IMG/VR virus record: IMGVR_UViG_3300034104_005687
Location: 1-64,000 of that record
DNA length: 64,000 bases
Reading direction: 5' to 3' (one strand)
Shown: piece by piece, positions 20,490 through 38,442 of the stretch
Layout: every line of letters starts with the position of its first letter
How positions within the stretch are numbered: position 1 is the first letter of the stretch
Notes under the pieces: generated by a model
Database searches by the model: none
What the model was told of the DNA's origin: nothing
Seen by the model: only the letters and a program-made list of their open reading frames with translations
Program-made: the position numbers and the translations under genes

Positions 20490-20587
20490 TTGTAGATAAA
20501 TGGATCTCGTTTGCGGAGCTCTTTGAGCTTTTTACGATAACGAATTTCCAGGGTGATTCGTGCCCATAATCTCTTGATCCAGTTCAT
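20486..20587 (-). CDS. 33-aa basic peptide MNWIKRLWARITLEIRYRKKLKELRKRDPFIYK
   Basis: Translated by hand; ATGA overlaps at both ends fill the gap exactly. Confidence 0.7.
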   Translation of the reverse strand: MNWIKRLWARITLEIRYRKKLKELRKRDPFIYK

Positions 20588-21627
20588 TTCAATTCCTTTA
20601 TTTGCTGTTCAGCATAGTCTGGATCGCTCCAGTTGTATGTGTATGTAGCTGAAATATTGCCAATTTGAATTTTATACACATCCAGGTGTTGAGCCAGCTG
20701 TGCCCAAATTTGTTCATAGTCTGTGGTACCAAAACTCTTGATCAAATTGACCTGAGCCACTTTGGGATGCCCTATGGTCAAACTTTTGTCTTCGGGGTCA
20801 AATCCGTTTTGTGTTAGCCAGGTTCTGAACTCTGCCAGTTGTTTTTGTTGCCAATAGTACGCACCCGGATCACGTGCCCATTCAATATCAAAGTCCCCAG
20901 CGGCTTGTGTTTGTGCTCGCAGTGAAGTTGTGGTCAACTCGCTGAGCCGCGAATCTCGACCTTCGTCGTTGAACACTTCCCAATGTGCTTTGCCCACAGC
21001 TTTGTTGACTCCCACATACACTCCGCCTAACTGTCGATTAATTGTTTCAATGCCAAACAGTTCGTAGTCTTCGGGCCCTAATTCAAATCGGGGTGCTCGC
21101 AGCCAACACATCAATTGACTGGGACGACGCCACTCAGGTGCTTGAATCACTTTACGCATGCTGAGCACCAGGCTTTCCAGTTCATGACACAAGAGATTTA
21201 GTTGTCGAATGTGCCAGCGAGTAACATCATCTGCTGCGGTATAGTACGGACTCATGGCTCCTGACACACCTTGTAGATCTTCAAAGTAGCGGTGCAACCA
21301 ATTCATGCGTTCATGATTGATGTCTAGGTCTGACTGTATCACTGATTCCACATTGTAATCAGGGCACACAATGTGATAGCCTAGGTTGGCTTGATTCACG
21401 GCTGTGATGCTGCGATTGATCTCTCCACAAATGTATTCAGCTGTGCGTTCGCTCTCAGTCCACCCCAGCCAACAGTAGTTCTTTTCCAAATGATATTGAT
21501 TCTGCACTAGATGCTGCAAGGCGGCGTGCCATTTACGTCCAAGACTGGTGTCAGGAACATCAATATACACTGGCAAAGTGCTGCCGGTGCGTGAGCTGCG
21601 TAATGTTATTGTGATTTGGTCAAGCAA
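20584..21627 (-). CDS. Hypothetical protein (LHRYFE / CHELE motifs)
   Basis: 347-aa ORF coupled to neighbours by overlaps. Confidence 0.8.
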   Translation of the reverse strand: MLDQITITLRSSRTGSTLPVYIDVPDTSLGRKWHAALQHLVQNQYHLEKNYCWLGWTESERTAEYICGEINRSITAVNQANLGYHIVCPDYNVESVIQSDLDINHERMNWLHRYFEDLQGVSGAMSPYYTAADDVTRWHIRQLNLLCHELESLVLSMRKVIQAPEWRRPSQLMCWLRAPRFELGPEDYELFGIETINRQLGGVYVGVNKAVGKAHWEVFNDEGRDSRLSELTTTSLRAQTQAAGDFDIEWARDPGAYYWQQKQLAEFRTWLTQNGFDPEDKSLTIGHPKVAQVNLIKSFGTTDYEQIWAQLAQHLDVYKIQIGNISATYTYNWSDPDYAEQQIKELK

Positions 21628-22912
21628 TTTGATCCCACCATTTCTTTATTTCAGGTCTCGCACTCAATATTGTGGCCATGTCTGTGGGCGCTGTGCGAAT
21701 ACTTTCTAATTTTAACACACGAGCCTTGCCTTGAGCAAGAGCAGACTGATAAGTGTCAGGCCATTGTTGTTCAAAAGTAGGTCTTGATTTTAACTGCGTT
21801 AGCACATCTCTCATGCTGGTTGCTGTGCATTTTGCAATCAATTCATCCAACCAAGGGTCCAGCAAATGTCGTGGCAAGGCCAAAGGACTCATCACAATGT
21901 CTGGAGAAAAGCTGAACATTACCTTGCTCAACAATTCTACATCATACTGCTGTGCCAATGCCTGTATGGCATCTACTTCAAACATACCTGGTAGAGTAAG
22001 TGTAAAGTCCAGTCTCATTTGTCTACGGTTTTGTTGATGTTGGCGTCCTGCTTCGAAGTTTCTGCAGAAAATATTGTAGTCGAGGCCTGTTCTAATGTAT
22101 TCACCAATTGCTCCAGTGCCGTCAATGCTTGCGCAAATTTGCCAATCTTGTATATGATCCAAAATATCGCTGTAAAGATTGCACCCGCGATAATCAATTC
22201 TGCTAAGGTTAGTGTTGTATCTAGCGTAAACATTTTTTCCATCCCCTAGTTCCACAATTCTTTTCATGTAGCGCCAATGCTGTTCATACATTAGAGGTTC
22301 GCCGCCAACCCAGTATATTTCTTCTACTCGGTGTTGCTCTACAGCATCACTGAATTCTTGTTCAATCTGCTGATCTTGAAACTGCGAGATTTGTTGTCGT
22401 ACACTGGGAGTCATCCAGTTGTTTTTAGAATTTGCCCAATCAACCATGTTGTGAGTTTTTTGTTCTGTTTCCCAGGATGACGACAACATGTCTCCGCAAG
22501 TTCTACACTTAAAGTTACATAGGTTACTGAACCTATAATCCCAGCTAACAGGTTGCATTGTGGTGGCTCCACTGGCATCAGTTGTGGCATATACTTCTGA
22601 TATTTTGTGCCCAAACAGATGACCAAAGTAGTCTCTGTACACGCTGGTGTTTAACAATTTTGAATTACAAACATCGCACTCGGGTAATGTTTCGCCGGCC
22701 ATCATTCGTCGACGTACACTCCGCATGTGTTCGCTGTTCCAGTGTTGCTCCAGTGTGGCAGGAATATACTGACCTGTGCCTGAACTAGTATCTATATATT
22801 GTTCAAAGTTCTGTGCAGGTTCACGACTAGCGCAACACAATCGTCGTTCAGTTTGCGGGCTAAGATATGTGTGAGTCCAAGGTGCAAGACAAAGAGTATC
22901 AGGTTTTTTCAT
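21620..22912 (-). CDS. Radical SAM protein with N-terminal Twitch/SPASM-like Cys motifs (rSAM 1)
   Basis: CLAPW...RLCC...CDVC, then NLCNFKCRTC (CxxxCxxC) and VGGEP. Confidence 0.92.
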   Translation of the reverse strand: MKKPDTLCLAPWTHTYLSPQTERRLCCASREPAQNFEQYIDTSSGTGQYIPATLEQHWNSEHMRSVRRRMMAGETLPECDVCNSKLLNTSVYRDYFGHLFGHKISEVYATTDASGATTMQPVSWDYRFSNLCNFKCRTCGDMLSSSWETEQKTHNMVDWANSKNNWMTPSVRQQISQFQDQQIEQEFSDAVEQHRVEEIYWVGGEPLMYEQHWRYMKRIVELGDGKNVYARYNTNLSRIDYRGCNLYSDILDHIQDWQICASIDGTGAIGEYIRTGLDYNIFCRNFEAGRQHQQNRRQMRLDFTLTLPGMFEVDAIQALAQQYDVELLSKVMFSFSPDIVMSPLALPRHLLDPWLDELIAKCTATSMRDVLTQLKSRPTFEQQWPDTYQSALAQGKARVLKLESIRTAPTDMATILSARPEIKKWWDQIA

Positions 22913-23864
22913 AAATTTGTTGGCATATCCAAGTATATAACTGTTCTAACCCGTGTTCTAAATTATCTGGTGGCTCCCACCCTAACACTTGTTGCACCAA
23001 AGTATTATCACTGGTACGGCCCATAACTCCAAGAGGACCGTCGATGTTGCGTATGCTCACAGACTTGTTGGCCAACTTGCTAATCAAAAATACCAGCTGG
23101 TTAATAGTGATCATTCGTTGACTACCAATGTTGATAGGTTGTGTGTAATTGCTGTCCATTAATCGATGAATACCTTCTATACACTCGTCAATGTAAAGAA
23201 AACTGCGTGTTTGTGTACCTGGACCCCAAACGTCAACAATGCCTTGATCTTCGCATTGTAGAACTTTGCGACACAGCGCAGCAGGGGATTTTTCTCTACC
23301 CCCGGTCCAAGCGGATTCAGCACCAAATACATTGTGCAGCCTGGCAATTCGAACATCGATACTGTGGTTACGAGCAAAGGTTGCATACAAACGTTCACTG
23401 AACAATTTTTCCCAGCCGTATTCAGAATCAGGTTCTGCCGGATATGCGCTGGCCTCGCTCATTACAGGATTGTCAGGATCTTGTTGATTGTAAGCAGGAT
23501 AAATGCATGCACTGGAACTGTAAAATATTTTTTTAATCTTCTTAAACACCATTTCGTGCAAGATATTCAAATTAATAATTGCCGAGTTGTGCATGATCTC
23601 AGCGTCATTGTTGCCAGTAAAGATATATCCTGCGCCGCCCATGTCTGCTGCCAACTGATATATTTCATCTATGTCCCGTGTAATCAATCTTGTGACTTGG
23701 CGTTGGTTGCGAAGATCCACAATATGGAATTCATTGGCATCAGTTTGACTAAACTCTGGACGATGTAGGTCAGCGCCTACAACATAGTGTCCTTGTGCTC
23801 TCAAACTCCGAACCAAGTGTGCACCAATAAATCCGCCTGCACCACAGACCAATACTTTTTTCAT
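22899..23864 (-). CDS. GDP-mannose 3,5-epimerase-like NAD-dependent epimerase
   Basis: GAGGFIG, QLAADMGGAGYI, FYSSSACIYP, YPAEPDSEYGWEKL, WTGGREKSPAALCRK; these are GME-family motifs. Confidence 0.85.
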   Translation of the reverse strand: MKKVLVCGAGGFIGAHLVRSLRAQGHYVVGADLHRPEFSQTDANEFHIVDLRNQRQVTRLITRDIDEIYQLAADMGGAGYIFTGNNDAEIMHNSAIINLNILHEMVFKKIKKIFYSSSACIYPAYNQQDPDNPVMSEASAYPAEPDSEYGWEKLFSERLYATFARNHSIDVRIARLHNVFGAESAWTGGREKSPAALCRKVLQCEDQGIVDVWGPGTQTRSFLYIDECIEGIHRLMDSNYTQPINIGSQRMITINQLVFLISKLANKSVSIRNIDGPLGVMGRTSDNTLVQQVLGWEPPDNLEHGLEQLYTWICQQIYEKT

Positions 23865-24466
23865 TCAGTTGCTTTCGTATAATATTCAGCCACATGTTTG
23901 TGTACATCGCTATCAACTATGTGGTAATAAGGGCGATAGCTTCTAGTTCTAGCATAATCCCAAAGATTTATTTTGCTACGATACTGGTCAAACTGTTCAA
24001 AGTATATATTTGTACTACCAAAACTAGAATGTTCAAAGCCGCCTTGGTCGAATAAAAATGGAATACTGCTCTGTACTAACTTATGAAGAGTATTCTCGAT
24101 TATGCACTTGTTCTCATACACAGCTAACTCGAGATCAAAAAATTCTGTGTAGTATTGTTTGAGAATTTTCAATTGAGTTGAATCAAAAGGTGTGGTTGTT
24201 TGATTGGCTGTGTGATAACTAAAAGGTACTACTGCACCGTTGTGTCTTGTTTGACTGCGTGTGCATGCAGTGCCCTGAACTATTATATAATCTGCAGATT
24301 CTGCAATGGCCTGATCAACTTGCATGGATATCATTAAATTTGTTGCAGACACACAGGCCAAGTTTGTCACTGAGTGCTGCTGAGCCAAATAATCTACCCA
24401 GCACGGACCGTATTCAGGATCACTGACACAGAAACTATCGCCGCAAATGTAAACTCTTTTTTTCAT
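23861..24466 (-). CDS. SGNH/GDSL-like hydrolase or acyltransferase
   Basis: Block I ICGDSF near the N-terminus, VTNLA, and a C-terminal His (YHIVDSDVH). Confidence 0.45.
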   Translation of the reverse strand: MKKRVYICGDSFCVSDPEYGPCWVDYLAQQHSVTNLACVSATNLMISMQVDQAIAESADYIIVQGTACTRSQTRHNGAVVPFSYHTANQTTTPFDSTQLKILKQYYTEFFDLELAVYENKCIIENTLHKLVQSSIPFLFDQGGFEHSSFGSTNIYFEQFDQYRSKINLWDYARTRSYRPYYHIVDSDVHKHVAEYYTKATE

Positions 24467-25467
24467 CCTAGAAACTTTTGCAAATCTCCAATGATTTCTT
24501 TTTCAAAGCGTTGTAAAACTTGATCGCGATCAAAGAATCTAGCATGATTATGCTGTAATTTTTGTTCAGTGTACGAATCAATACCAATATTGCCACTGCG
24601 GAACCTGGCAACATTATCTAGTATCAACTCAGTTACAACATTGTGTCTGCCTTGGTCTGATTCAACTAAGTCGTAGCTTTCGTCCCAAAGATTGTCAAAG
24701 GTCTCAAATCCTTCTCTGCGCAAGTATTCAAGTGTGCCAAGACTGCCGTATACAACCATAGGATGATAAAACATGCCTGGCTTAAAAAGTTTTTCACTGA
24801 CCTCTGTGCGGTAGTTGGGAACCGTTGGACAGGCAATCCAGGGGTCTGACCTCATGTAGCTTTCTACAACCACGCTGAAAAATGTAGAGTTGTACCACAT
24901 GGGGTTGATATAAAATTCCCAAAAAATACTATTGTCGATAGTATGATCTTTGTCACCGGGCACAAATATGTCTTTTTCAACATAGCTCCACAGGGCCTGA
25001 TCCAATACTGGTCGCAGTTTTTCCTGTGCTTGATCTCTGTGCCAGCGTGTTTTGTGCATAGGCATAAAAAATGCATGCGTATAGTTTCGCTGCGGAACAT
25101 AGTTATGATAGCCTTGCTCCATAAAACGTATGCACTCTCGATACCAAACCCAGTTACCGTTTCGCAAAATCAGTCTACCGTTTTTTACAGTGCTAGGTGT
25201 GTCAACATCGCTGTCCCATAAATGATCTACTACTACACGAAAGCCTGCTTGTTCAAACGGTGTAAACCATCCTGTTGAGTTGCGTGTTTCAACTTCTTCA
25301 ACATGTGTGATCAATATCACTGTGTCACATGGATTGTAGGTCTTGGCAGCATCATAAACTTCTATGTTGTACCATGGCTCTACAATACGCTGAATATCCC
25401 CGCTTATAAAACAAGGATGGTTGCCTTGTTGATAAATGAAACGAATTTTACTCATACCGGTAATCAA
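24463..25467 (-). CDS. Putative GT10-like glycosyltransferase, TEK-x-FKP family (paralog 4)
   Basis: FSVVVESY...EVSEKLFKPGMFYHPM...GFETFDNLWDESYD. Confidence 0.55.
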   Translation of the reverse strand: MITGMSKIRFIYQQGNHPCFISGDIQRIVEPWYNIEVYDAAKTYNPCDTVILITHVEEVETRNSTGWFTPFEQAGFRVVVDHLWDSDVDTPSTVKNGRLILRNGNWVWYRECIRFMEQGYHNYVPQRNYTHAFFMPMHKTRWHRDQAQEKLRPVLDQALWSYVEKDIFVPGDKDHTIDNSIFWEFYINPMWYNSTFFSVVVESYMRSDPWIACPTVPNYRTEVSEKLFKPGMFYHPMVVYGSLGTLEYLRREGFETFDNLWDESYDLVESDQGRHNVVTELILDNVARFRSGNIGIDSYTEQKLQHNHARFFDRDQVLQRFEKEIIGDLQKFLG

Positions 25468-26659
25468 TTATCTCAGCAAGTTCGGGTGCAACTGTGGCCA
25501 AGTTTTGTTGGCGCTTACGATCTAGGTCACGCACTTTCATACGCAACATGAATCCATCAGTTGATGCACCACGACGCATGAAGTCACAAATTCGATCAAA
25601 TTCGTCACGCCATTGAGACGGAATGCTGGCAGATTCTAAGTGCAATATGATGTCGTTCTTGGCTGATTCTGGCAGGGTTGCAATACTGAAATACCAGGCG
25701 TCATGCATCATGTTCCAGTACACAAAGTCAAATCCTTGACCAGCAATCCAATTAGCCAGCTGATCAATATATCGAACATTGAACACATTTACAGTACTGC
25801 AACACTGTAGTCGGATGTTGGGATAGTCTTTCCTTAGTAAACGGAAACGATCAATATTGAATACTACGTCTGACCATACAGCGTTTGAACGCTGATATTC
25901 AAATCTTGCGCCTAGGTCATCAATTGAAAATGCTATTTCCACAGTTTTAAAATGCTTCCAAATTTCAATAGCTTGCTCTGGATATTGTGTGCCATTGGTA
26001 TTGTAGTGTATTTCAACTTGATGCGCGATGCCACGATCCACAATACCTTGCAGCATGGCAAAATGTTGTTCAATCATGAATGGTTCGCCGCCAGTGAACT
26101 CAATATAACGAATGTCTGTTAAATGCTGGTCGATCTGATTCCAGAACTGCAGATTTTCTTTGGGCCAGGCGCCGGCACGCAACATTTGATATGCATAGGT
26201 ACTTTTCTTTTCTTCAGGAGGTGCATCGTTGATCTCTTCGGTAGCAAACTGACTTGAACTCCAAGATCCACATATGCGACATTTTAGGTTGCAGATATTG
26301 CCCAGCTTGAGATCCAGAAACATCAAAGGTTTGGCATCTTCGGTCCAGGTCTGATTGCCAATTATATGCTTGAGCCGATCCAGTGTGTGCATACGTTTGC
26401 TAGTACGGCCAGATCGTTCTTCGTTCCAGCACTTTCTACAAGTTTGCGGTTTTTCGCCTGCAAGAAATTGTTGTCGCAATTCACGCATGCCACCACTGTT
26501 CTGAATATTGCCAAAGTCTGCTGTAAGCAAATTGAACTTTTTGCCAGCATCATCCACAAGTTCGTCGTCGGCTAGACAACAAGGTCTCACAGTACCAACA
26601 GGGCTGGCTTCTAGACTAATCCAGGGCAGCACACAGAATGTAGGGTGTGGTATGTTCAT
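25448..26659 (-). CDS. Radical SAM protein with N-terminal Twitch/SPASM-like motifs (rSAM 2)
   Basis: CVLPW...RPCC...CRKC; NICNLKCRIC; FTGGEP. Confidence 0.92.
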   Translation of the reverse strand: MNIPHPTFCVLPWISLEASPVGTVRPCCLADDELVDDAGKKFNLLTADFGNIQNSGGMRELRQQFLAGEKPQTCRKCWNEERSGRTSKRMHTLDRLKHIIGNQTWTEDAKPLMFLDLKLGNICNLKCRICGSWSSSQFATEEINDAPPEEKKSTYAYQMLRAGAWPKENLQFWNQIDQHLTDIRYIEFTGGEPFMIEQHFAMLQGIVDRGIAHQVEIHYNTNGTQYPEQAIEIWKHFKTVEIAFSIDDLGARFEYQRSNAVWSDVVFNIDRFRLLRKDYPNIRLQCCSTVNVFNVRYIDQLANWIAGQGFDFVYWNMMHDAWYFSIATLPESAKNDIILHLESASIPSQWRDEFDRICDFMRRGASTDGFMLRMKVRDLDRKRQQNLATVAPELAEIIDYRYE

Positions 26660-27915
26660 TTTAATGCTCGCAATTCAGGAATTATGTTCATAATGTTTTC
26701 ATTTCTAATAGAATCTAGCTCATAGGTCTTGCGCCAAAATGTGTCTAGTAGGTGTGTGTTGTCAGTCTGCATCATGAAATTAATTGCACTCTCAAATCCC
26801 ACTGTGGCTCTGGACAATTGATCTTGTGGCCTCAGCCATTCAATATGCTGTTCAAATTTGTGCTTAATCTGTTGTTTATACTCAGTAGTAGCAATGTCTA
26901 TTCTGTAGTGTACTGGATCTTGCAAGATATTTACATTTAAGTCTTGCGCTCGTAATAGGCCTTGCTCAACCCAGTCACGATGAAAATCTGGCAGGTGCAG
27001 GGCGTTCATGATGCTTAGAGTGGGGCTGATATAGAAGTCTACTTCGGGGCATATTCTCATCATGTCTCGGCGATTCTGTTCTACCACTGCCCAGTCTGTG
27101 CCTTTGCGTATGTATTCACCTCTAGCACCAGATGCGTCTAGGCTAGCACCAACTGCTACTGATTTGAACTGGCTCCAATACTCAAACACTGATCGGCCTT
27201 TGAGGTCGGTGTGGGTAAAGTTGGTGTTGTAGATCAGTCGCACATCAAATCGCTTTCTGCGTACCAGTTCGTCAAGAATACGATAGTGTTCCTCCATCAG
27301 CAAGGGCTCGCCACCAGCAAAGTAAATCTGTTCCACGTAGTCAAGATGAGGCTCTAGTTGTGACCACATGTCTGTTTCTGTGCGCCCAGCATAGTTCAGC
27401 ACTGTGTTGCGGTCTTTCCAGTCACCGCCGGCCAGCTTGGCCTGATCCTGATACCATTGGCTGCTAAAGATGTGTCCACAGCTACGACATTTCAAATTGC
27501 ACAGGTTGCTGAATCTAATATCCCAGTAAGTCATTTCAAAAGGATTTGACTCTAGCTTTTTGATGTGATGTCCGTGATGCTTGTTGGCGCTTTTACGACC
27601 ACTAAAGAATCCTGATGCTTCTTGTTCATAACAACGACCGCAAGCAGCGTTGGAGGTTTCACTCAGCATGTCTTTGCGCAACTGTGCCATGGGCTGATCA
27701 CGCCATATTTCTTCAAGAGTATTGGTACGACAATTGCCTACTTGGCCCACGCCCATTTCAGCATGACAACAAGGATATGCTTCACCTGTGGGATATGCAT
27801 GCAGGTGAATCCAAGGATAGATGCAAAAGGTCTTGGAATCTTGTAGCAAGAATTCTTCACGGTCGGTAAGGTCCACTGGCTTTACCAAGTCTGATGAGTT
27901 GTAGTTATAGGTCAT
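26656..27915 (-). CDS. Radical SAM protein with N-terminal Twitch/SPASM-like motifs (rSAM 3)
   Basis: CIYPW...YPCC...CGRC; NLCNLKCRSC; FAGGEP. Confidence 0.92.
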   Translation of the reverse strand: MTYNYNSSDLVKPVDLTDREEFLLQDSKTFCIYPWIHLHAYPTGEAYPCCHAEMGVGQVGNCRTNTLEEIWRDQPMAQLRKDMLSETSNAACGRCYEQEASGFFSGRKSANKHHGHHIKKLESNPFEMTYWDIRFSNLCNLKCRSCGHIFSSQWYQDQAKLAGGDWKDRNTVLNYAGRTETDMWSQLEPHLDYVEQIYFAGGEPLLMEEHYRILDELVRRKRFDVRLIYNTNFTHTDLKGRSVFEYWSQFKSVAVGASLDASGARGEYIRKGTDWAVVEQNRRDMMRICPEVDFYISPTLSIMNALHLPDFHRDWVEQGLLRAQDLNVNILQDPVHYRIDIATTEYKQQIKHKFEQHIEWLRPQDQLSRATVGFESAINFMMQTDNTHLLDTFWRKTYELDSIRNENIMNIIPELRALK

Positions 27916-29252
27916 AGTGTGTTGTACCAGTTGGTAATATCAGCCCTGATACCAAATGTTTCGGCAAAGTTCTTGTTGCGGCGGCGGTCGTACTGTGAGA
28001 AAAACTCATGAAAGTCGTTGAGCAAGCGAGGCATGTCAAATGCTTCTGAATGCGGAGTTTCAACTACATCCAAGTAATCGATTAACCTCTGCAAGTGATC
28101 CAGTTCATGTTCATGAAACAAGGGATTGTGCTGATTGCGGTAGTGTAGTTCTTTTAGTTCTGCAGCAAATCTAGCACGTAGGTCATGTGGCATTACCAGC
28201 GCACTTTGAAAACTGGGAAATCTCAAAATATTCAAGGTGTAACTTACTGCGTCACGCCCGTGGCGTTGCTTTAATTCTAGTAGATAACGCAAATGGTCAG
28301 ACAAGCTGGGCAGGCACAGTGCATTGATTGTGCCCATAAAGTGCAGGGTGCGTACACGCCTACTGGCCAAGATCTTTTCTACATTTGCCTGCCAGGCTGT
28401 GTAATCTAGGCCATCACGTATGTATTCAGCTTGGACACCCACGGCTTCCTGACTGGTATAGATATCTACATCCAGTCCTTGTATTGAATCCAACAGTCGG
28501 TCTACATCTACATCTGCACCTAGATTTGAGTTGATGGCCAGGCGTGTGTTGCTTCGCCCTGGATTGTTGCGAAACCAGTCAATCAGCTTCCAGGTATGGC
28601 CGCTCATTAAGGGCTCTCCACCAGTGATTCTTAACTCTTGTAGGGTGCTATGCAGATCTGATTCCCACCATGCAAAAAAAGCTTCAACATACGGATTGGT
28701 CTCCCCGAAACGATACAGTTGAGCACTTGAGTGCTCATGTGTAAAGTGATTACGACCGTCAGACACAAGGCCCATATAGGGTCCGTTATTCCTAATATCT
28801 TTAACCCATGTTGAGCTAAAAGCAGGATTGCAGTAACTACAAGCAAACTGGCAGGTCCGATCAAAAGCAATTTCAAGAGTTCGCAAATCAACATCTTGGT
28901 CAACTGGAGTTTCATATGCTTCCTTTAATGCAGCAATGGGGTAAATCTTTGACTTGTACACACGGTCGCTGACAGCATCACGACCCATGTCTTCAATTTT
29001 CCAGCAGTATTCGCAACCTGCAGGACGTTCACCTGCAATCATTTTGGCACGATCAGCTTTCTTTTGCGGTGTATTGTGCAGCAGCTTAGGGTTGGTTGTG
29101 ACTTTATCAATGTCCACCAAATGAGCTGGCGGGTGGTGGCAGCTGGTGCTCATGCCGCTACCAAGCCAAATGGTAGCATTAAACCACTTTGCGCCACAAA
29201 AACTAGGGCTCAGTGTGTCCAGTACTTGCTGGCGAAATTCAAGATCGTTCAT
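27912..29252 (-). CDS. Radical SAM protein with N-terminal Cys/His motifs (rSAM 4)
   Basis: CGAKW...SCHH...CEYC; RTCQFACSYC; ITGGEP. Confidence 0.92.
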   Translation of the reverse strand: MNDLEFRQQVLDTLSPSFCGAKWFNATIWLGSGMSTSCHHPPAHLVDIDKVTTNPKLLHNTPQKKADRAKMIAGERPAGCEYCWKIEDMGRDAVSDRVYKSKIYPIAALKEAYETPVDQDVDLRTLEIAFDRTCQFACSYCNPAFSSTWVKDIRNNGPYMGLVSDGRNHFTHEHSSAQLYRFGETNPYVEAFFAWWESDLHSTLQELRITGGEPLMSGHTWKLIDWFRNNPGRSNTRLAINSNLGADVDVDRLLDSIQGLDVDIYTSQEAVGVQAEYIRDGLDYTAWQANVEKILASRRVRTLHFMGTINALCLPSLSDHLRYLLELKQRHGRDAVSYTLNILRFPSFQSALVMPHDLRARFAAELKELHYRNQHNPLFHEHELDHLQRLIDYLDVVETPHSEAFDMPRLLNDFHEFFSQYDRRRNKNFAETFGIRADITNWYNTL

Positions 29253-30345
29253 TTAGATAATTTAGTAGATTTTGTGGCAGTAGAGCACGTTGCTCACGAT
29301 TGTACTCCACAAGATGTTGCTGATTGTATTTACAGATGTCGCGGCTGGCCTTCCAGAAATCCCCAGAGCCCGAGTAACTTATGGCACGTACTGTATCTAT
29401 TATACGCTCACTCCTGGCTTGTGGACAATCAATTTGGTCGTAGCTTTCGTCTAACAATGTGTGAAATGTTTGAAATCCTGCGTTGCGTAGATCTCGCAAA
29501 TAGCCCTGATTGGCTGCAACCACAAATGGGTGTGCCATCAGAATAGGCTTGTAGATCTTTTCTGTACGAAATGTGTGCGGATAATCAAAAATGGTTTCTG
29601 TTACCAAACTGAACCAGGTGTCTGTGTAGCAACGATGATTCACAATAGCATCGCCCCAGGTGTTGTTGAACAGTTGATGTTTGACAAAGCCTGCGTCAGG
29701 GACTGCGTTTAACTGCGGCACAGCACGATCTATTTCGTATTCAGGCGGCAACAAACGTATAGGTTCTGTTTTGCCTGTGTCCAACGCAGACGTAAATGCC
29801 ATTTCGACTTGACTGCCCAAATTGGTCCACAGTGCATGTGACAACATGCCTTGTGCTCTTAGATGATCCATTAGGTACTTGCGGTGTGGTCGCAATCGTC
29901 CGTTAAGGAACAAAAATTCATAAGGACGATGTTCTTTGTATTCCAAGGCACCTTCAATCTGTGCTGCCTTGTTTTCTGTGTACTCCACTATGTTAGAGAA
30001 GTAGCAATCTGTTTTGCAATAACGCCACCCTGGTTCTAAGTCGCCAGAGGTCAACAAACCAATGCGACCATCGCGCACATGGTCAGCGATACGCAATCGT
30101 CGGAGTTGCAGCAACACAGTTTCAGATCCTTCAGCAGGATTTGAAAACACAATGCTCCCTGGATACTGAGTAGCCCACTCTGTGATTTCTGTCCAGTGCT
30201 GTTTCAACAGCACACGGCCCACAATGTACACAGTGTTGGGATCTAACTCAGCAGGCCATTGCCAGAATTCTTCGTCAGAATAGGGCTTCAACAAGTCATA
30301 GACTTCGGCCCAGGTGTCTACTGCAATCTTATGTGACCCTAGCAT
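29239..30345 (-). CDS. Putative GT10-like glycosyltransferase, TEK-x-(F/Y)KP family (paralog 5; start moved from 30501)
   Basis: WFSLVTETIF...FRTEKIYKPILMAHPF...GFQTFHTLLDESYD; ATG 30345 overlaps the end of rSAM 5. Confidence 0.55.
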   Translation of the reverse strand: MLGSHKIAVDTWAEVYDLLKPYSDEEFWQWPAELDPNTVYIVGRVLLKQHWTEITEWATQYPGSIVFSNPAEGSETVLLQLRRLRIADHVRDGRIGLLTSGDLEPGWRYCKTDCYFSNIVEYTENKAAQIEGALEYKEHRPYEFLFLNGRLRPHRKYLMDHLRAQGMLSHALWTNLGSQVEMAFTSALDTGKTEPIRLLPPEYEIDRAVPQLNAVPDAGFVKHQLFNNTWGDAIVNHRCYTDTWFSLVTETIFDYPHTFRTEKIYKPILMAHPFVVAANQGYLRDLRNAGFQTFHTLLDESYDQIDCPQARSERIIDTVRAISYSGSGDFWKASRDICKYNQQHLVEYNREQRALLPQNLLNYLNERS

Positions 30346-31729
30346 AGTATTCACATTCGTGCCACCAGGTGGCCATTTCAGGAAACATTTTCTTAAAGTC
30401 TGTGCCTCTGCGACGATCGTGCTCTGAGAAAAAACGATGGAAATCTGCTTTGGCCACAGTGTGATCTTGTCCTTGGCCTGTTCGCATCCAGGCAATGTCA
30501 CGTTCTAGACGCTGTACTTCATAGTCCTTGAATCCGTGCAGGGGATTGGCTTCTGTGGTCATGTTGGCCAGCATGAAGTCACGTGACTTTTCTAGTTGTA
30601 CTGCATAACTTTCAGGCAACAGTTGCAGACTCTGCCACGCAGGTTCTCTAAGAACAGGTGTATCGAACCACACACGCTGATAGGTTGTGCTGTGAGTGCG
30701 TCTAAGTTGCAGGATCCATTCCATGTAGTCTTGAAATCCAGTGACACTCAAGTTGTTCATTGTGATAATAAACGTTAGACTGTTGCGAGTGGGCACTTCT
30801 GTCAAGAAACGATTCACATTGCGTACCACTCGATCAGCACTCATACCGTGTCTAATATACTCGGCCTGTGCACCACGTCCTGAGTCCAGGCTCACGTACT
30901 GCATGAAGTGTTCAATGTTGGGTGTGCATAGTTGTTTGGCATAGCCTAGATACTTTTCAAACAATGCATCTTCCACTGAGAAGTTTGATGTTACGTTTAG
31001 ATGCAACTTGGGACTAGGATTTGCCAACACATAATCAAACACTCGATAGGTATTTTTGTCCATCAAGGGCTCGCCGCCAGTCATGCGGAAATGTTCTAGC
31101 TTAGGATACAGTGTGGGCCACCATGACCAAAACGCTTCAACATATGGATTAGCCTCCCGAACTGGGATAGGTTTGCGATTACCGGTAAAGTGAGTAGGAT
31201 CGTTATGGGTAGTACTAGTCGGATATCCTCCCAACCTATCAACTTCATCAGCCCATGAGCTACTAAATTGAGGGCTACAGTAACTACACTTGAGATTACA
31301 AGCGTGATTAAAGTTAACTTCCACGTAACTGGGTACGATATCATCTTCTGTTCCTGTTGAATTACGAATCTGTTCAAAGTCTACTGCGGCCCAGGGCTCT
31401 CCTGACCGATAGTGTCTATCCGACAGTTTGTCGTTGGCTTCCATGTTCCAGCAGTACTGACACTCTGAGGGCTTTTCACCACGCAGCATCATCACACGCT
31501 GAGCCTTTTTGTGATCAGTGTTATGTAGGCCGCCGGGCCGAGCCAGATCAGCTTTGGTGATCTTGTGCAAGGGAGGATGATAACATGAGTTGTTGAGACC
31601 TGTAGGCAAGTGAAAACTCACTTGCTTCCATTTGGCCAAGCACAGTGCAGGACCAAGATCCTGTTTCATTTGTTCAGCTGAGTTTAAGAACCTGCTTTTG
31701 TTGTCTACGGTTTCGTCGCCTTTATTCAT
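30329..31729 (-). CDS. Radical SAM protein with N-terminal Cys/His motifs (rSAM 5; start moved from 31831)
   Basis: CLAKW...SCYH...CQYC; HACNLKCSYC; MTGGEP. ATG 31729 overlaps the upstream gene's end. Confidence 0.92.
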   Translation of the reverse strand: MNKGDETVDNKSRFLNSAEQMKQDLGPALCLAKWKQVSFHLPTGLNNSCYHPPLHKITKADLARPGGLHNTDHKKAQRVMMLRGEKPSECQYCWNMEANDKLSDRHYRSGEPWAAVDFEQIRNSTGTEDDIVPSYVEVNFNHACNLKCSYCSPQFSSSWADEVDRLGGYPTSTTHNDPTHFTGNRKPIPVREANPYVEAFWSWWPTLYPKLEHFRMTGGEPLMDKNTYRVFDYVLANPSPKLHLNVTSNFSVEDALFEKYLGYAKQLCTPNIEHFMQYVSLDSGRGAQAEYIRHGMSADRVVRNVNRFLTEVPTRNSLTFIITMNNLSVTGFQDYMEWILQLRRTHSTTYQRVWFDTPVLREPAWQSLQLLPESYAVQLEKSRDFMLANMTTEANPLHGFKDYEVQRLERDIAWMRTGQGQDHTVAKADFHRFFSEHDRRRGTDFKKMFPEMATWWHECEYYARVT

Positions 31730-32423
31730 TGTAAACTGCTTTCCATACCATATCAAATATATCACTGCGATAAAGATCAAGTTCTTGTGCCATAAAAACA
31801 CAAAAATCATCCTGATCTTGATCAATATCAATCACATGTTCTGCCTGCGAAAAATCCATTGGCCAGTTGTTGTAATAATTTTTGTGCCAAGAAATAATCT
31901 CGTAAGCAGAATTTATTTTATCCAAACACTCTTGAGCTATGGATTCTAATAGGTCCGGCACATCAATATTTTGGTTAATTACTTTTGAATAGTCTGCTTG
32001 TACTTCGCCTAGAATATGTGCAGGCAACTGATCCAGTTGTTCTGTGCAATTGATTTCGGGCCAGGCAGGATCTTTGATGGCCTGATAGTGCAACAATCTT
32101 GAAACGTCGTTTTGAATTTGTAGATCTACAAATCTTTTGTGTCCGTGCAGAATCCACTCTCTTCTTAAACTAGACTGCAAATCAGATTTGATAAAGGTTA
32201 TTGATTGCCCTGGAAAAACTTTGGCAATTTGTTGACTGTTCATGCAGTGTGTTAACGTGTGATCTAACGGATTTGATAGAACAGTGTCTAATAGATATCT
32301 GTGCTGAAATACCTGATCGCGATTTGTGTTGTCGTAACTGATGTTAAATTTGTCCCAGGAGTTTCCTAAAAGACGCTGCAGATATCGGTTGCCGCCAGCA
32401 CCGGGACAAAAAGCAATTATCAT
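31722..32423 (-). CDS. Hypothetical protein; weak sulfotransferase/P-loop-like N-terminus
   Basis: MIIAFCPGAGGNRY start resembles a 5'-phosphosulfate-binding loop. ORF solid, function weak. Confidence 0.6.
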   Translation of the reverse strand: MIIAFCPGAGGNRYLQRLLGNSWDKFNISYDNTNRDQVFQHRYLLDTVLSNPLDHTLTHCMNSQQIAKVFPGQSITFIKSDLQSSLRREWILHGHKRFVDLQIQNDVSRLLHYQAIKDPAWPEINCTEQLDQLPAHILGEVQADYSKVINQNIDVPDLLESIAQECLDKINSAYEIISWHKNYYNNWPMDFSQAEHVIDIDQDQDDFCVFMAQELDLYRSDIFDMVWKAVYNE

Positions 32424-32500: not shown

Positions 32501-33424
32501 TTACCAACCTTCTTGCTTGCGGATTACATCAATTTCTCGAATCATGATGCCTTGATTGTGCCAATTTGATCTATAGTGATGTTTAAAAAATGAACTTTGT
32601 TCAGCCTCTAATATAGCCATTGGCAAATCTAATTGTGTACCAAGTTCAGGTCCCAACTGGTTGGCCAATATACGCGGCTGCGAATCTTTGACTGTGTCCC
32701 ATAATTTTGCTAATGCATCAAAGTCTTGTACTTGAGTATGGTCCCAGTTTGTGAGCATGGTCATGTATGTTCCTTGCCGTGCTCCTGCAATTGCCCATTC
32801 TCCATTTTCGACATCACTGCCTACATTGTGCCAGATTGTGAGATTGTCAAGATTGCGCAGTACCTGAGTTTTGAATTCTTCCACAGTGGGCTTGCGTCCA
32901 CGTTGTAGGCTCATTTTGACGCCTTCGCGAAACCCTGCACGCCAGGCTTGAAAAGGTGATCCATTAGGGTATGTTTTGCTGTAGCAGTCGTGCATGGCCC
33001 AATACGCAGGGTCAAAGCAAAACTCTACTTGTGTTTCTGTTCTACCGTCGGTGGCTTCATGCGTCTGCATGGCCGCAACAAAAGTCTTGGTCCACGAACT
33101 GAGTCCTCCGTTGCCATACATCAGTCCATTGATATGATTACGTGCTCGCCATCTAAACACAGCTTGTTCATAATCAGGTGTAGGAAAATGTAGCGTTTGA
33201 TTAAAAAAGCTTGCATTGGGAAGATTGTCTCCATCAATGAGAATAAATCTTTCAGTGCCAGATGCCAAGGCTGCGGCCTTGTGCGCTGCATCGCTGCCCT
33301 TGACACCGTCTACCCGTTTGGCCCAGGGCACCATGTTCTTGATTTTGACCCAAAATTCTTCGCGTTGAGGTTCATCATAGGTTAGAAAAATGCAGTCTAG
33401 ATCTGCTATGTCAATTTGTTTCAT
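32501..33424 (-). CDS. GT-A fold glycosyltransferase-like protein
   Basis: [29 protein letters not shown] (DxD), [18 protein letters not shown]. Confidence 0.65.
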
Positions 33425-33731
33425 AAGTTTGTTTGCTCCAGCATTGGTGTGGTTGTTGATCAGACACTACTACAGCAACATCACAAGGATGACATGGCGT
33501 TCCTGTTTCGGCATGCTCCAGTCGTGCAGTAGTTTGCCAAGTCAGTTCTACTAGTTTGCCACCGCGCACTCGCACATTGGTGGCGCTGCGGGCAAAAGTG
33601 TCTGCGTCAATTTCTATGTATGTACCTGGCACATCTTCCATGCTGTAGAATAACGGAACACCTTGACTGTCATGATACAGTCGAAAGAACACAGGCACTG
33701 GGTCAGCAAAATTCATTTGATATTCAATCAT
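33411..33731 (-). CDS. Hypothetical protein (start moved from 33764)
   Basis: ATGA overlap with the upstream stop at 33728-33731. Confidence 0.7.
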
Positions 33732-36610: not shown

Positions 36611-36623
36611 TCTTTTGTCCTAA

Positions 36624-38434: not shown

Positions 38435-38442
38435 TATTTATA
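38435..38442 (-). promoter_or_regulatory. T4-type late promoter TATAAATA
   Basis: Exact consensus overlapping the upstream stop, followed by AAGGA and the fibre gene. Confidence 0.7.

What the first reader, a model, noticed from the sequence alone, without database searches (positions are those of the whole stretch)
21620..31729. Five radical SAM enzymes with the auxiliary Cys domain N-terminal, in two subtypes
Each has C-x-x-(P/K)-W, then CC (rSAM 1-3) or C-x-H (rSAM 4-5), then CxxC, all before the CxxxCxxC core (seen). Characterised SPASM/Twitch enzymes (BtrN, anSME, MoaA) carry this domain C-terminally (established), so this looks like a permuted architecture. Three are adjacent and they alternate with GT-like genes, suggesting stepwise sugar tailoring (oxidation, epimerisation, deoxygenation). 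Oxygen-sensitive Fe-S enzymes beside an O2-dependent oxygenase are also notable (inference).
Basis: partly seen in the sequence, partly recalled or inferred. Interest (0 to 1): 0.7.

Follow-up and report, generated by a model that had tools for sequence, protein, structure and literature searches.

The report
N-terminal-twitch radical SAM genes, phage glycan operon
Five related iron-sulfur radical enzymes sit among sugar-transferring genes beside the tail genes of a 349-kb lake-water phage; their unusual domain order is real but already catalogued as a large protein family that I found no characterised member of, and they most likely tailor sugars of a phage-made glycan.

Summary
Five minus-strand ORFs (21620-22912, 25448-26659, 26656-27915, 27912-29252, 30329-31732) each carry four N-terminal Cys ahead of the CxxxCxxC core. 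The architecture is not new. All five score 277-389 bits (cut-off 170) on NCBIfam NF033640, 'N_Twi_rSAM'. I found no characterised member of this family in the paper library or among solved structures. A profile of the N-terminal domain alone finds only BtrN's C-terminal twitch domain in the PDB, with all four Cys in register. The window opens a 349-kb T4-like jumbo phage from lake water. That phage has nine NF033640 genes, 16 radical SAM genes in all, and two Fe-S carrier genes. The neighbours are glycosyltransferases: GT-B fold (Z 12.3 to GT10 fucosyltransferase) and glycogenin-like GT8. With them sit nucleotide-sugar reductases, a DegT aminotransferase, a carbamoyltransferase, an amidinotransferase-like protein and a 2OG oxygenase-like protein. 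All lie in one packed block downstream of baseplate and fibre genes. The same module recurs in unrelated phage contigs and, in minimal form, in cultured Ralstonia phage RsoM2USA. Radical tailoring of a phage glycan is the best reading, but it is inferred.

The parts
21620..22912 (-). rSAM1, N-terminal-twitch radical SAM, P-W/CC clade
   Evidence: NF033640 285 bits, cut-off 170. Motifs CLAPW, CC, CDVC, CNFKCRTC. Clade placement from the family tree.
25448..26659 (-). rSAM2, N-terminal-twitch radical SAM, P-W/CC clade
   Evidence: NF033640 336 bits. Pfam SPASM at residues 9-78.
26656..27915 (-). rSAM3, N-terminal-twitch radical SAM, P-W/CC clade; the protein that was modelled
   Evidence: NF033640 389 bits. 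AF2 model pLDDT 95.6, pTM 0.93. Core residues 127-384 match anSME at Z 13.3 and BlsE at Z 13.1. Full-length AFDB matches reach TM 0.86.
27912..29252 (-). rSAM4, N-terminal-twitch radical SAM, K-W/CxH clade
   Evidence: NF033640 277 bits. Motifs CGAKW, CHH, CEYC, CQFACSYC. Clade placement from the tree.
30329..31732 (-). rSAM5, N-terminal-twitch radical SAM, K-W/CxH clade; member of the conserved core module
   Evidence: NF033640 305 bits. 35% identical (E 2e-83) to RsoM2USA_349, which lies in a colinear module.
24463..25467 (-). GT-B-fold glycosyltransferase-like protein; one of at least 9 paralogs in the genome
   Evidence: AF2 pLDDT 92.6. VIA-align Z 12.3 over the full length to H. pylori alpha1,3-fucosyltransferase, and all top 50 matches are GT-B enzymes. 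No Pfam family, and PF00852 does not hit.
29239..30501 (-). Second GT-B-like paralog between rSAM5 and rSAM4; the true start is probably the ATG near 30345
   Evidence: BLASTP to 24463-25467: E 1e-14, 32% identity over the C-terminal half. Shares the invariant E, EK, G and YD columns of the paralog family.
22899..23864 (-). NAD-dependent nucleotide-sugar epimerase/reductase (SDR)
   Evidence: Pfam Epimerase E 1e-39. Best NCBIfam match is GDP-L-fucose synthase, 114 bits, below its cut-off.
23861..24466 (-). 201-aa protein with an N-terminal GDS motif; possibly an SGNH-type esterase or acyltransferase
   Evidence: Motif read from the sequence only. No family hit.
20584..21627 (-). 347-aa protein of unknown function directly downstream of rSAM1
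   Evidence: A homologue (E 2e-54) sits directly upstream of another rSAM array in L027. No family hit.
19002..20489 (-). Carbamoyltransferase (NodU/CmcH type)
   Evidence: Pfam Carbam_trans_N and Carbam_trans_C, E 1e-38 and 5e-46. A homologue (E 5e-193) follows the rSAM array in L023.
18427..19011 (-).
   Evidence: Atlas feature score 0.95 and structure TM 0.72-0.78 to PF13640 clusters. An HxD motif is visible in the sequence. No Pfam hit.
17404..18432 (+). Amidinotransferase-like protein
   Evidence: Atlas score 0.90-0.92 to ADI / inosamine-phosphate amidinotransferase clusters. 30% identical (E 2e-22) to the 'glycine amidinotransferase' of cyanophage S-SCSM2R. C-terminal GGISCCTQD motif.
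15116..17420 (+). Two further GT-B-like paralogs (15116-16246 and 16230-17420)
   Evidence: They fall in the same all-vs-all BLAST family as 24463-25467 and align with it.
31722..32423 (-). 233-aa protein of unknown function just upstream of rSAM5
   Evidence: No family hit.
32501..33424 (-). Conserved partner protein of the rSAM arrays (DGDN and NGLxYGNGG motifs); function unknown
   Evidence: Homologues lie next to rSAMs in L023 (E 5e-129), L017 (E 2e-50) and RsoM2USA (E 1e-67). No PDB or Pfam match.
33728..35342 (-). Two GT8-like (glycogenin-like) glycosyltransferases (33728-34495 and 34482-35342)
   Evidence: The family profile hits only glycogenin in the PDB, E 6e-6, across the DxD region. 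Colinear homologues occur in L023 and RsoM2USA.
9317..11342 (+). SDR nucleotide-sugar dehydratase/epimerase (9317-10285) and DegT-family aminotransferase (10239-11342)
   Evidence: Pfam E 7e-43 and 6e-67. The same pair flanks the rSAM array in L023.
11314..15117 (-). 1267-aa protein with about 12 W-x-P-x-P-x-DPPY-type repeats and a C-terminal domain like 32501-33424
   Evidence: Sequence. Paralogy to 32501-33424. A homologue (E 1e-165) is present in L023.
35645..38408 (-). Thr/Ala/Gly-rich 321-aa protein and a 594-aa fibre-like virion structural protein just upstream; candidate glycan acceptors (inference)
   Evidence: Composition T 21%, A 18%, G 10%. phrog_14394 virion structural protein. The 594-aa protein has ten paralogs in the genome.

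Best explanation
The five genes are paralogous members of the curated N-terminal-twitch radical SAM family (NF033640). I found no characterised member of that family.

Each enzyme most likely binds two [4Fe-4S] clusters. The CxxxCxxC cluster cleaves SAM to the 5'-deoxyadenosyl radical. The second cluster is held by four invariant N-terminal Cys: the C of C-x-x-P/K-W, the first C of CC or CxH, and the CxxC. These correspond one-to-one to the auxiliary-cluster region of BtrN.

The genes lie in a tightly packed, co-directional block of a freshwater T4-like jumbo phage. That block runs from baseplate and fibre genes into a set of glycosyltransferases and sugar-nucleotide and amino-sugar tailoring genes.

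I infer that the radical SAM enzymes abstract hydrogen from sugar carbons, acting on nucleotide-sugars or on the growing glycan between glycosyltransferase steps. The auxiliary cluster would serve as electron acceptor or relay, giving BtrN-like oxidation to a ketone, or epimerisation or deoxygenation.

The different ancient paralogs would then perform different steps. The product would be a heavily tailored glycan, most probably displayed on virion fibre or baseplate proteins.

Shown: family membership, domain homology and order, conserved ligand set, fold, gene neighbourhood and its recurrence, and purifying selection. Inferred: cluster binding, sugar substrate, reaction type and glycan target.
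For: Family and architecture:
- NF033640 at 277-389 bits for all five.
- The N-terminal profile hits only the BtrN twitch domain, E 1e-4, with four Cys in register.
- The four Cys, the core CxxxCxxC and GGE(P) are invariant across 21-29%-identical paralogs.
- AF2 model pLDDT 95.6. Its core is closest to anSME, BlsE, CteB and SkfB at Z 12-13.

Real, constrained genes:
- dN/dS is about 0.1 where synonymous divergence could be estimated (rSAM3 and rSAM4). Synonymous sites are saturated for the other pairs, while amino-acid identity to orthologues stays at 67-84%.
- Near-identical DNA is held in at least 20 lake-water metagenome runs.

Glycan context in the window:
- GT-B-like paralogs and GT8-like proteins.
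- Two SDRs, DegT and a carbamoyltransferase.
- An amidinotransferase-like protein.

Recurrence elsewhere:
- L017 has 8 rSAM genes alternating with 4 GT2 genes, plus one rSAM-GT2 fusion protein.
- L023 has 8 rSAM genes with the same flanking carbamoyltransferase, DegT, SDR, GT8-like and 32501-like genes in the same order.
- A cellular MAG locus combines N_Twi rSAM with GT2, GT4, GDSL and B12-rSAM genes.
- Cultured phage RsoM2USA has a colinear minimal module.

Virion link:
- The block 18427-63805 is co-directional with gaps of 162 bp or less. It starts with baseplate hub and wedge genes, a 4900-aa structural protein and fibre-like Thr-rich proteins.
- Published notes place radical SAM cassettes in the host-recognition cluster of pelagimyophages (PMC7029224).

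Fe-S investment: 16 radical SAM genes and two A-type Fe-S carrier genes in the genome.
Against: - I found no biochemically characterised member of NF033640: no paper in the searched library mentions it, and no solved structure has this domain order.
- Some family members sit in contexts or fusions that point to proteins or peptides rather than sugars. Examples are Sel1 and TPR fusions, a subtilase fusion, and a ThiF plus methyltransferase neighbourhood.
- Four other NF033640 genes of this phage lie away from sugar genes. Two of them sit next to the terminase gene and a YadA-like fibre gene.
- Cluster geometry could not be measured. Model coordinates are not exposed, and the ligand co-fold was not run.
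- Several neighbour assignments rest on fold or look-alike evidence only. Pfam finds nothing for the GT-like, oxygenase-like and amidinotransferase-like proteins.
- No glycan, acceptor protein or expression data exist. No RNA run was found.
Confidence: 0.5

Rival explanations
1. The enzymes modify proteins or peptides rather than sugars. They could install crosslinks or epimerise residues in the phage's own structural proteins (fibres, the 4900-aa protein), as SPASM/twitch maturases do on RiPPs and, in one recent report, on whole proteins.
For: - The structural cores closest to the model include the peptide-modifying enzymes anSME, CteB, SkfB and SuiB.
- Some family members are fused to Sel1 or TPR repeats or to a subtilase.
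- One cellular locus pairs two members with ThiF and a methyltransferase.
- Four paralogs of this phage lie among structural or packaging genes without sugar genes.
- A 2026 paper reports protein thioether crosslinks made by a SPASM enzyme (PMC13692751, listed).
Against: - There is no room for a precursor-peptide gene. Genes overlap or are separated by less than 100 bp within the rSAM block.
- No recognition-element domain was reported by Pfam or NCBIfam.
- The recurrent partners are glycosyltransferases and sugar-nucleotide enzymes, including a direct GT2 fusion.
Confidence: 0.15
2. The locus makes a diffusible aminoglycoside- or aminocyclitol-like small molecule rather than a surface glycan. 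The steps would be a BtrN-like radical dehydrogenase, a DegT-type aminotransferase, an amidinotransferase, a carbamoyltransferase and glycosyltransferases.
For: - The parts list parallels the known logic of butirosin, streptomycin and tobramycin pathways (established knowledge of BtrN/BtrS, StrB1 and TobZ).
- The only PDB relative of the N-terminal domain is BtrN.
- The amidinotransferase-like gene resembles inosamine-phosphate amidinotransferases.
- Authors of cyanophage S-SCSM2R called the same trio 'antibiotic synthesis genes' (PMC12801897).
Against: - No inositol-phosphate or 2-deoxy-scyllo-inosose synthase, resistance gene or export gene was seen among the ORFs scanned.
- At least nine GT-B-like and two GT8-like transferases, placed inside a tail-gene block, fit a polymer or protein glycan better.
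- In S-SCSM2R the amidinotransferase sits beside KdsA and KdsB, which are LPS-sugar genes.
Confidence: 0.1
3. The glycan pathway is real, but its target is the infected cell's envelope (LPS, capsule or S-layer) rather than the virion. Remodelling could block superinfection or protect the cell, as auxiliary metabolic genes do.
For: - LPS-related genes are common in marine T4-like phages, and radical SAM cassettes accompany them in pelagimyophages (PMC7029224).
- The S-SCSM2R amidinotransferase lies beside KdsA and KdsB.
- The cellular MAG locus looks like a cell-surface polysaccharide cluster.
Against: - No flippase, polymerase, ligase or undecaprenyl-phosphate transferase was found among the scanned ORFs.
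- The genes are embedded co-directionally in the baseplate and fibre block.
- GT8-like glycogenin relatives are protein-glycosylating enzymes (plus established knowledge of glycogenin).
Confidence: 0.12
4. The enzymes and transferases hypermodify phage DNA or nucleotides, for example by building tailored sugars on bases, as T4 glucosyltransferases do.
For: - The GT-like model matches T4 beta-glucosyltransferase at Z 10.3.
- The radical SAM proteins give weak viperin and MoaA (nucleotide-acting) matches.
- Several invariant Arg residues could bind phosphates.
Against: - No thymidylate-synthase-family gene (the family that includes dCMP and dUMP hydroxymethylases) is present in the 97%-complete genome.
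- T4 BGT ranks below the GT10 fucosyltransferases and is one of many GT-B hits.
- The viperin and MoaA scores are far below their cut-offs.
Confidence: 0.06

Closest known systems
NCBIfam NF033640 (N_Twi_rSAM, 'twitch domain-containing radical SAM protein')
   Same: All five proteins match end to end above the curated cut-off. They share the four N-terminal Cys, the CxxxCxxC core and the same length class. AlphaFold DB clusters have the same full-length fold at TM up to 0.86.
   Different: Nothing structural. The family model is of type 'subfamily' and its name gives no function. Here the members occur as nine paralogs in one phage, from both deep clades.
BtrN (2-deoxy-scyllo-inosamine dehydrogenase, butirosin pathway; PDB 4M7S/4M7T)
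   Same: BtrN is the only solved protein whose sequence matches the N-terminal domain, at residues 164-242, E 1e-4. The four Cys and the G-x-V-x-P-C hairpin motif are in register. It acts on an amino-sugar-like substrate ahead of a DegT-type aminotransferase (established knowledge).
   Different: In BtrN the twitch domain follows the barrel; here it precedes it. Overall sequence similarity is confined to that domain and to the SAM-binding motifs. BtrN has a single-copy pathway role and is not part of paralog arrays.
anSME (SPASM) and BlsE (twitch-type cytosylglucuronate decarboxylase)
   Same: These are the best structural matches to the barrel, residues 127-384 of the model, at Z 13.3 and 13.1. 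BlsE acts on a sugar nucleoside.
   Different: Their auxiliary domains are C-terminal, and anSME binds two auxiliary clusters. The N-terminal 126 residues of the model are not covered by any alignment.
Radical SAM cassettes in T4-like environmental phages (Nishimura 2017, PMC5332604; Zaragoza-Solas 2020, PMC7029224)
   Same: These are T4-like phages with many radical SAM genes together with A-type Fe-S carrier genes: 12 rSAM genes in one 183-kb genome. Radical SAM cassettes are also reported in the hypervariable host-recognition cluster near tail fibres.
   Different: Those papers only note the genes. The family, the domain order, the subtypes and the link to glycosyltransferases were not analysed there. 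This phage is from fresh water and is about 349 kb.
GT10 alpha1,3-fucosyltransferase (H. pylori FucT, PDB 2NZW), for the neighbouring GT-like genes
   Same: GT-B fold over the whole length, Z 12.3. A conserved acidic residue and a (T/S)EK...KP-like motif sit in the C-terminal half. The resemblance of that motif to GT10 is from memory.
   Different: Pfam PF00852 does not match and identity is about 10%. The family has no Pfam model at all.

Membership tests
NF033640 N_Twi_rSAM | Whole-protein score at or above the curated cut-off (170 bits), with near full-length coverage of the 398-position profile | tested here: met
   285, 336, 389, 277 and 305 bits, with profile coverage from positions 1-3 to 386-397. 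The genome search agrees.
NF033640 N_Twi_rSAM | A twitch-like Cys domain located N-terminal to the radical SAM core | tested here: met
   Pfam SPASM at residues 8-96 of rSAM1-3. The N-terminal profile hits the BtrN twitch domain with four Cys aligned. The Cys are invariant in the paralog alignment.
Radical SAM superfamily | CxxxCxxC cluster motif, GGE SAM-binding motif and a partial TIM barrel | tested here: met
   C139/C143/C146 and G201-G202-E203 are invariant. The model core matches radical SAM structures at Z 10-13.
Radical SAM superfamily | Reductive cleavage of SAM to 5'-deoxyadenosine | not testable with these tools
   Needs anaerobic biochemistry.
SPASM/twitch subgroup as described for solved enzymes (Grell, Goldman & Drennan 2015) | Auxiliary-cluster domain is a C-terminal extension of the barrel | tested here: not met
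   The homologous domain lies at residues ~30-100, before the CxxxCxxC at ~139. The RadicalSAM.org paper notes such N-terminal Cys sets in Megacluster-1-1 without structures (PMC9477430).
SPASM/twitch subgroup as described for solved enzymes (Grell, Goldman & Drennan 2015) | One auxiliary [4Fe-4S] cluster bound by the domain's Cys (twitch) rather than two (SPASM) | tested here: inconclusive
   Only four conserved Cys are present, enough for one cluster and in register with the BtrN twitch region. Geometry could not be measured, and the ligand co-fold was not run.
RiPP radical SAM maturases | Adjacent precursor peptide gene and a peptide-recognition (RRE) domain | tested here: not met
   No RRE-type family appears in the Pfam or NCBIfam hits. 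Genes overlap or are separated by less than 100 bp, so no small precursor ORF fits in the rSAM block.
GT10 fucosyltransferases (neighbouring GT-like genes) | Match to Pfam PF00852 | tested here: not met
   There is no hit to any of the nine paralogs. The only weak hit in the genome lies elsewhere.
GT-B fold glycosyltransferases (neighbouring GT-like genes) | Two-Rossmann-domain GT-B fold | tested here: met
   Model pLDDT 92.6. All of the top 50 VIA-align matches are GT-B enzymes, at Z 8.6-12.3 over the full length.
GT8 (33728-34495 and 34482-35342) | Sequence homology to GT8 enzymes, including the DxD motif | tested here: met
   The family profile hits only glycogenin-1 and glycogenin-2 in the PDB, E 6e-6, across the N-terminal 117 positions including the D-x-D. 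Pfam itself does not reach them.

The most novel reading that the evidence does not exclude
Phages, and some bacteria, run an 'alternating' glycan assembly line. In it, orphan N-terminal-twitch radical SAM enzymes act on sugar residues between successive glycosyltransferase steps. The two deep clades (P-W/CC and K-W/CxH) would carry out different radical reactions. The product would be a radically tailored glycan on virion fibres that shapes host recognition. This would give the first function to a family of more than 7,000 sequence clusters. It would also reveal a new class of glycan-modifying radical SAM chemistry that can be tested in the cultured phage RsoM2USA.
Probability: 0.3. Interest if true: 0.8.

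Novelty: new member of a known kind. Interest (0 to 1): 0.55.

Why it matters
The N-terminal-twitch family is very large: 7,430 clusters at 50% identity with E <= 1e-30. I found no characterised member and no solved structure of it.

This locus and its relatives give the clearest contextual clue to its function that I could find. The genes form arrays interleaved with glycosyltransferases, in one case fused to one, and they are flanked by the same amino-sugar tailoring genes in unrelated phages.

If the enzymes tailor a virion glycan, several things would follow:
- Phage glycobiology would gain radical chemistry.
- The many Fe-S carrier and radical SAM genes carried by environmental T4-like phages would have an explanation.
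- There would be a mechanism for diversifying host-recognition surfaces.

The colinear minimal module in cultured Ralstonia phage RsoM2USA makes the question testable at the bench.

Tried and rejected
- Megablast of the locus against 50,697 phage records found nothing.
- The search for related loci with the paralog alignment failed for lack of a conserved stretch.
- 'Relatives' cannot be drawn for a virus record, so no taxon-wide census of NF033640 was possible.
- The single-protein scan of genome contigs found only two contigs of a MAG labelled Haliscomenobacter. These look like related phages.
- Complex prediction with SAM and two 4Fe-4S ligands was not folded. It is no evidence either way.
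- Pfam at E <= 10 gave nothing for ten neighbour ORFs. PHROGs gave nothing for seven of them, and NCBIfam nothing for eight.
- PF00852 (GT10) does not reach the GT-like family.
- PhyH is absent. PF13640 finds only a weak hit at 326 kb and not the window's oxygenase-like ORF.
- The profile of the 32501-33424 family has no PDB relative.
- The T4 late-promoter octamer TATAAATA occurs once (38435-38442, minus strand), which is what chance gives.
- No RNA run holds the locus, so expression was not examined. I did not lay reads.
- Literature searches for 'N-terminal twitch', 'N-terminal SPASM', 'NF033640' and 'N_Twi_rSAM' returned no paper.

Full report
**Observation.**
- rSAM1, 21620-22912
- rSAM2, 25448-26659
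- rSAM3, 26656-27915
- rSAM4, 27912-29252
- rSAM5, 30329-31732

Each translation shows C-x-x-(P/K)-W, then CC (rSAM1-3) or C-x-H (rSAM4-5), then CxxC, all ahead of CxxxCxxC. I aligned these five with three further paralogs from the same genome. Identity to rSAM3 is only 21-29%. Even so, the columns C31, W35, C49, C92, C95, C139, C143, C146 and GGEP are invariant.

**What the proteins are.** All five match NCBIfam NF033640, 'N_Twi_rSAM, twitch domain-containing radical SAM protein'. Scores are 277-389 bits against a cut-off of 170, over almost the whole profile.
- Pfam places its SPASM model on residues ~8-96 of rSAM1-3.
- NCBIfam models of StsB, NirJ2, AhbD and the ACGX enzyme match this N-terminal stretch with their C-terminal SPASM regions.
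- A profile of the N-terminal 110-125 residues alone (20 sequences) finds exactly one protein in the PDB. That protein is BtrN, at residues 164-242, which is its C-terminal twitch domain. E is 1e-4, and the four Cys and the G-x-V-x-P-C hairpin motif are in register.

It is also already the defining feature of a curated family. Only the first Cys of the 'CC' aligns with a BtrN Cys; the residue after it is F in BtrN.

**Fold.** An AlphaFold2 model of rSAM3, built with 103 family sequences, is very confident: pLDDT 95.6, pTM 0.93.
- Its barrel (residues 127-384) is closest to anSME (Z 13.3), BlsE (13.1), CteB (12.6), SkfB (12.1), viperin and MoaA (Foldseek).
- No solved structure covers the N-terminal domain together with the barrel.
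- AlphaFold DB fold clusters do contain full-length matches, with TM up to 0.86. One is named 'Twitch domain-containing radical SAM protein'.
- I could not measure the Cys geometry. Coordinates are not exposed, and a co-fold with 4Fe-4S and SAM was not run by the tool.

**Family size and subtypes.** A profile search of 1.84 billion representatives gives 7,430 clusters at E <= 1e-30. Many of the best hits are tandem double or triple fusions of the unit.
- Among 168 domains in the best 150 proteins, P-W goes with CC in 103 and K-W goes with C-x-H in 45.
- A FastTree tree of 103 sequences splits into two clades at 99% local support that follow this motif. The label changes far fewer times than in shuffles.
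- rSAM4, rSAM5 and a sixth copy at 150 kb fall in the K-W/CxH clade. rSAM1-3 and two further copies (at 137-140 kb) fall in the P-W/CC clade.
- Each paralog has its own closer relative in other metagenomes. The paralogs are therefore old lineages, not recent duplicates.

**The genome.** The window is the first 64 kb of a 349,369-bp viral record, 97% complete by CheckV.
- It encodes a T4-type baseplate wedge, a baseplate hub and a T4-type terminase.
- The rSAM2-rSAM4 stretch (25448-29252) is held at 0.77-1.00 of its sampled words in at least 20 lake-water metagenome runs.
- Proteins 85-92% identical to rSAM3 are encoded on contigs of up to ~350-365 kb.
- The genome carries nine genes above the NF033640 cut-off.
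- It also carries four B12-class radical SAM genes, one of them KedN5-like, and three others with C-terminal Cys-rich tails. That makes 16 radical SAM genes.
- It has two A-type Fe-S carrier genes. Nishimura et al. saw the same combination in a marine T4-like genome with 12 radical SAM genes (PMC5332604).

**Neighbours in the window.** The ORFs between the radical SAM genes have no Pfam, NCBIfam or PHROG match. The evidence for each comes from other methods.
- *24463-25467 and 29239-30501.* They are paralogs within a genome family of at least nine.
- *Fold of 24463-25467.* Its model has pLDDT 92.6 and matches H. pylori alpha1,3-fucosyltransferase at Z 12.3 over the full length. All 50 best matches are GT-B glycosyltransferases. 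Pfam GT10 itself does not match.
- *33728-34495 and 34482-35342.* These form a family whose profile hits only glycogenin (GT8) in the PDB, E 6e-6, across the DxD.
- *22899-23864.* An SDR, closest to GDP-fucose synthase.
- *9317-10285 and 10239-11342.* A second SDR and a DegT aminotransferase.
- *19002-20489.* A NodU/CmcH-type carbamoyltransferase.
- *17404-18432.* Amidinotransferase-like, and 30% identical to the annotated enzyme of cyanophage S-SCSM2R.
- *18427-19011.* 2OG-Fe(II)-oxygenase-like.

The minus-strand block 18427-63805 is packed, with gaps of 162 bp or less and many 4-20-bp overlaps. It runs from baseplate genes through a 4900-aa virion protein and fibre-like Thr/Ala/Gly-rich proteins into the transferase and radical SAM genes.

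**Recurrence elsewhere.**
- *L017.* A metagenome contig with eight radical SAM genes alternating with four GT2 genes, and one protein that fuses the two.
- *L023.* A divergent phage contig that has, in the same order as the window, both GT8-like genes, the 32501-like gene and eight consecutive radical SAM genes. After these come the carbamoyltransferase, the repeat protein, DegT and the SDR.
- *Vibrio phages K566 and K567.* Each has four copies clustered together.
- *Ralstonia phage RsoM2USA.* This cultured phage has a colinear minimal module: structural protein, 35282-like, two GT8-like, 32501-like, one K-W/CxH radical SAM (35% identical to rSAM5, E 2e-83), and a second 32501-like gene.
- *A cellular MAG locus.* It combines a Sel1-fused member with GT2, GT4, GDSL, TPR and B12-radical-SAM genes.
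- *Counter-examples.* Not every context is glycan-like. One cellular locus pairs two members with ThiF and a methyltransferase, and one protein is fused to a subtilase.

**Selection.** Against the orthologues in two related contigs (binned into a MAG labelled Haliscomenobacter), the radical SAM proteins are 67-84% identical. dN is 0.13-0.28, and synonymous sites are saturated or nearly so. dN/dS is about 0.1 where it can be computed. The glycosyltransferase-like genes at the same positions are only 34-42% identical.

**Mechanism.** I commit to the following, as inference. Each enzyme binds the SAM cluster plus one auxiliary [4Fe-4S] on the four N-terminal Cys. It generates the 5'-deoxyadenosyl radical and abstracts hydrogen from a sugar carbon of a nucleotide-sugar or of the glycan being built by the interleaved transferases.

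The fully Cys-ligated auxiliary cluster would then take an electron, giving oxidation to a ketone as in BtrN. That could feed the DegT aminotransferase and then the amidino- and carbamoyl-transferases. Alternatively the cluster would support epimerisation or deoxygenation.

The extra Cys (CC clade) or His (CxH clade) next to the ligand may distinguish two reaction types. The B12-class enzymes would add C-methyl groups.

The position inside the tail and fibre block points to virion proteins as acceptors. So do the protein-glycosylating character of glycogenin-like GT8 enzymes and the published notes on radical SAM cassettes in pelagimyophage host-recognition clusters (PMC7029224). I give the sugar-tailoring reading about 0.5 and the virion target about 0.3.

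**Rivals.**
- *Protein or peptide modification.* Supported by the peptide-modifying nearest structures and by the Sel1, TPR and subtilase fusions. Weakened by the absence of any precursor gene or recognition domain.
- *An aminoglycoside-like small molecule.* The parts list resembles butirosin and streptomycin logic, and the S-SCSM2R authors called similar genes 'antibiotic synthesis genes' (PMC12801897). However, no cyclitol synthase or export gene is seen, and there are eleven-plus transferases.
- *Remodelling of the host envelope.* No flippase, polymerase or ligase was found.
- *DNA hypermodification.* No thymidylate-synthase-family hydroxymethylase is present in the genome.

**Novelty and score.** The architecture, the family and the occurrence of radical SAM cassettes in T4-like phages are all already on record. 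These are therefore new members of a known kind. I found no report of three things:
- the tight, recurrent coupling to glycosyltransferases;
- the two-clade structure of the family;
- the tractable RsoM2USA module.

Literature searches for the family names returned nothing. The RadicalSAM.org paper only remarks that some Megacluster-1-1 members have conserved Cys N-terminal to the barrel (PMC9477430). Interest is moderate, at 0.55: a very large orphan enzyme family now has a concrete, testable functional hypothesis.

Noticed in passing
whole genome G000 (window is G000:C1:1-64000); copies at 137609-138751, 138742-139890, 150267-151520 and 221592-222722, outside the window: The 349-kb phage carries nine NF033640 genes and 16 radical SAM superfamily genes in all. 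These include four B12-class enzymes, one of them KedN5-like. It also has two A-type Fe-S carrier genes (180906-181208 and 242401-242700). That is an unusually heavy Fe-S investment for a virus.
   Followed up: partly
window 11314-15117 (-): A 1267-aa protein built of about 12 repeats of a W-x-P-x-P-x-D-P-P-Y-I-Y-x-F-G-N-Q...V-E-Y-H-V-x-G-A-T-E-x-K-Y-M unit. Its C-terminal domain is homologous to the 307-aa partner protein at 32501-33424. No family hit; a homologue is present in L023.
   Followed up: partly
G000:C1:312284-312844 (outside the window): Two DegT-family fragments, one of them interrupted by two TGA stops, lie between an SDR gene (311383-312327) and a GT-B-like paralog (312901-313917). 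This looks like a decayed second copy of the SDR-DegT-GT module.
   Followed up: no
window 24463-25467 and 29239-30501 versus L018 and L019: The glycosyltransferase-like genes at syntenic positions are only 34-42% identical between related phages, while the flanking radical SAM genes are 67-84% identical. The transferases diversify, or are swapped, much faster than the radical enzymes.
   Followed up: partly
L018, L019 (NZ_JBBAKG010000001.1 and NZ_JBBAKG010000003.1): A 6.9-Mb MAG labelled Haliscomenobacter sp. EUL_031 contains two contigs (183 kb and 148 kb), each with an orthologous five-rSAM cluster. They are probably two related jumbo phages binned with a bacterium. This is either a binning artefact or a hint to the host.
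   Followed up: partly
L028 (Ralstonia phage RsoM2USA, MG752970.1, 217327-221946): A cultured jumbo phage has a colinear minimal version of the module: two GT8-like genes, a 32501-like gene, one K-W/CxH radical SAM and a second 32501-like gene. All are annotated 'hypothetical protein'.
   Followed up: partly
window 17404-19011; L029 (Synechococcus phage S-SCSM2R, 213353-216336): The amidinotransferase-like gene and a 2OG-Fe(II) oxygenase-like gene are neighbours both here and in a cultured cyanophage. In the cyanophage they sit beside KdsA and KdsB.
   Followed up: partly
proteins P0121-P0152 and others: Many metagenomic proteins of 800-1200 aa are tandem double or triple fusions of the whole N-twitch radical SAM unit. 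Others carry about 130-245 extra N-terminal residues, Sel1 or TPR repeats, a subtilase domain or a GT2 domain.
   Followed up: partly
window 2068-3150 (+) and 4743-6023 (+): A MoxR-type AAA+ ATPase gene, followed about 1.6 kb downstream by a DUF2201 metallopeptidase-like / VWA protein gene. These lie upstream of the glycan region.
   Followed up: no
window 8278-8970 (+): A ThyX (flavin-dependent thymidylate synthase) gene lies next to the SDR-DegT pair. No ThyA-family gene is present anywhere in the genome.
   Followed up: partly
window 39206-53908 (-): A 4900-aa virion structural protein (phrog_10938) lies directly downstream of the baseplate wedge gene. It has two shorter paralogs elsewhere in the genome.
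   Followed up: no
window 38435-38442 (-): The only TATAAATA (T4 late-promoter octamer) in the window lies 27-34 nt upstream of the fibre-like gene 36624-38408. One occurrence is what chance gives.
   Followed up: yes
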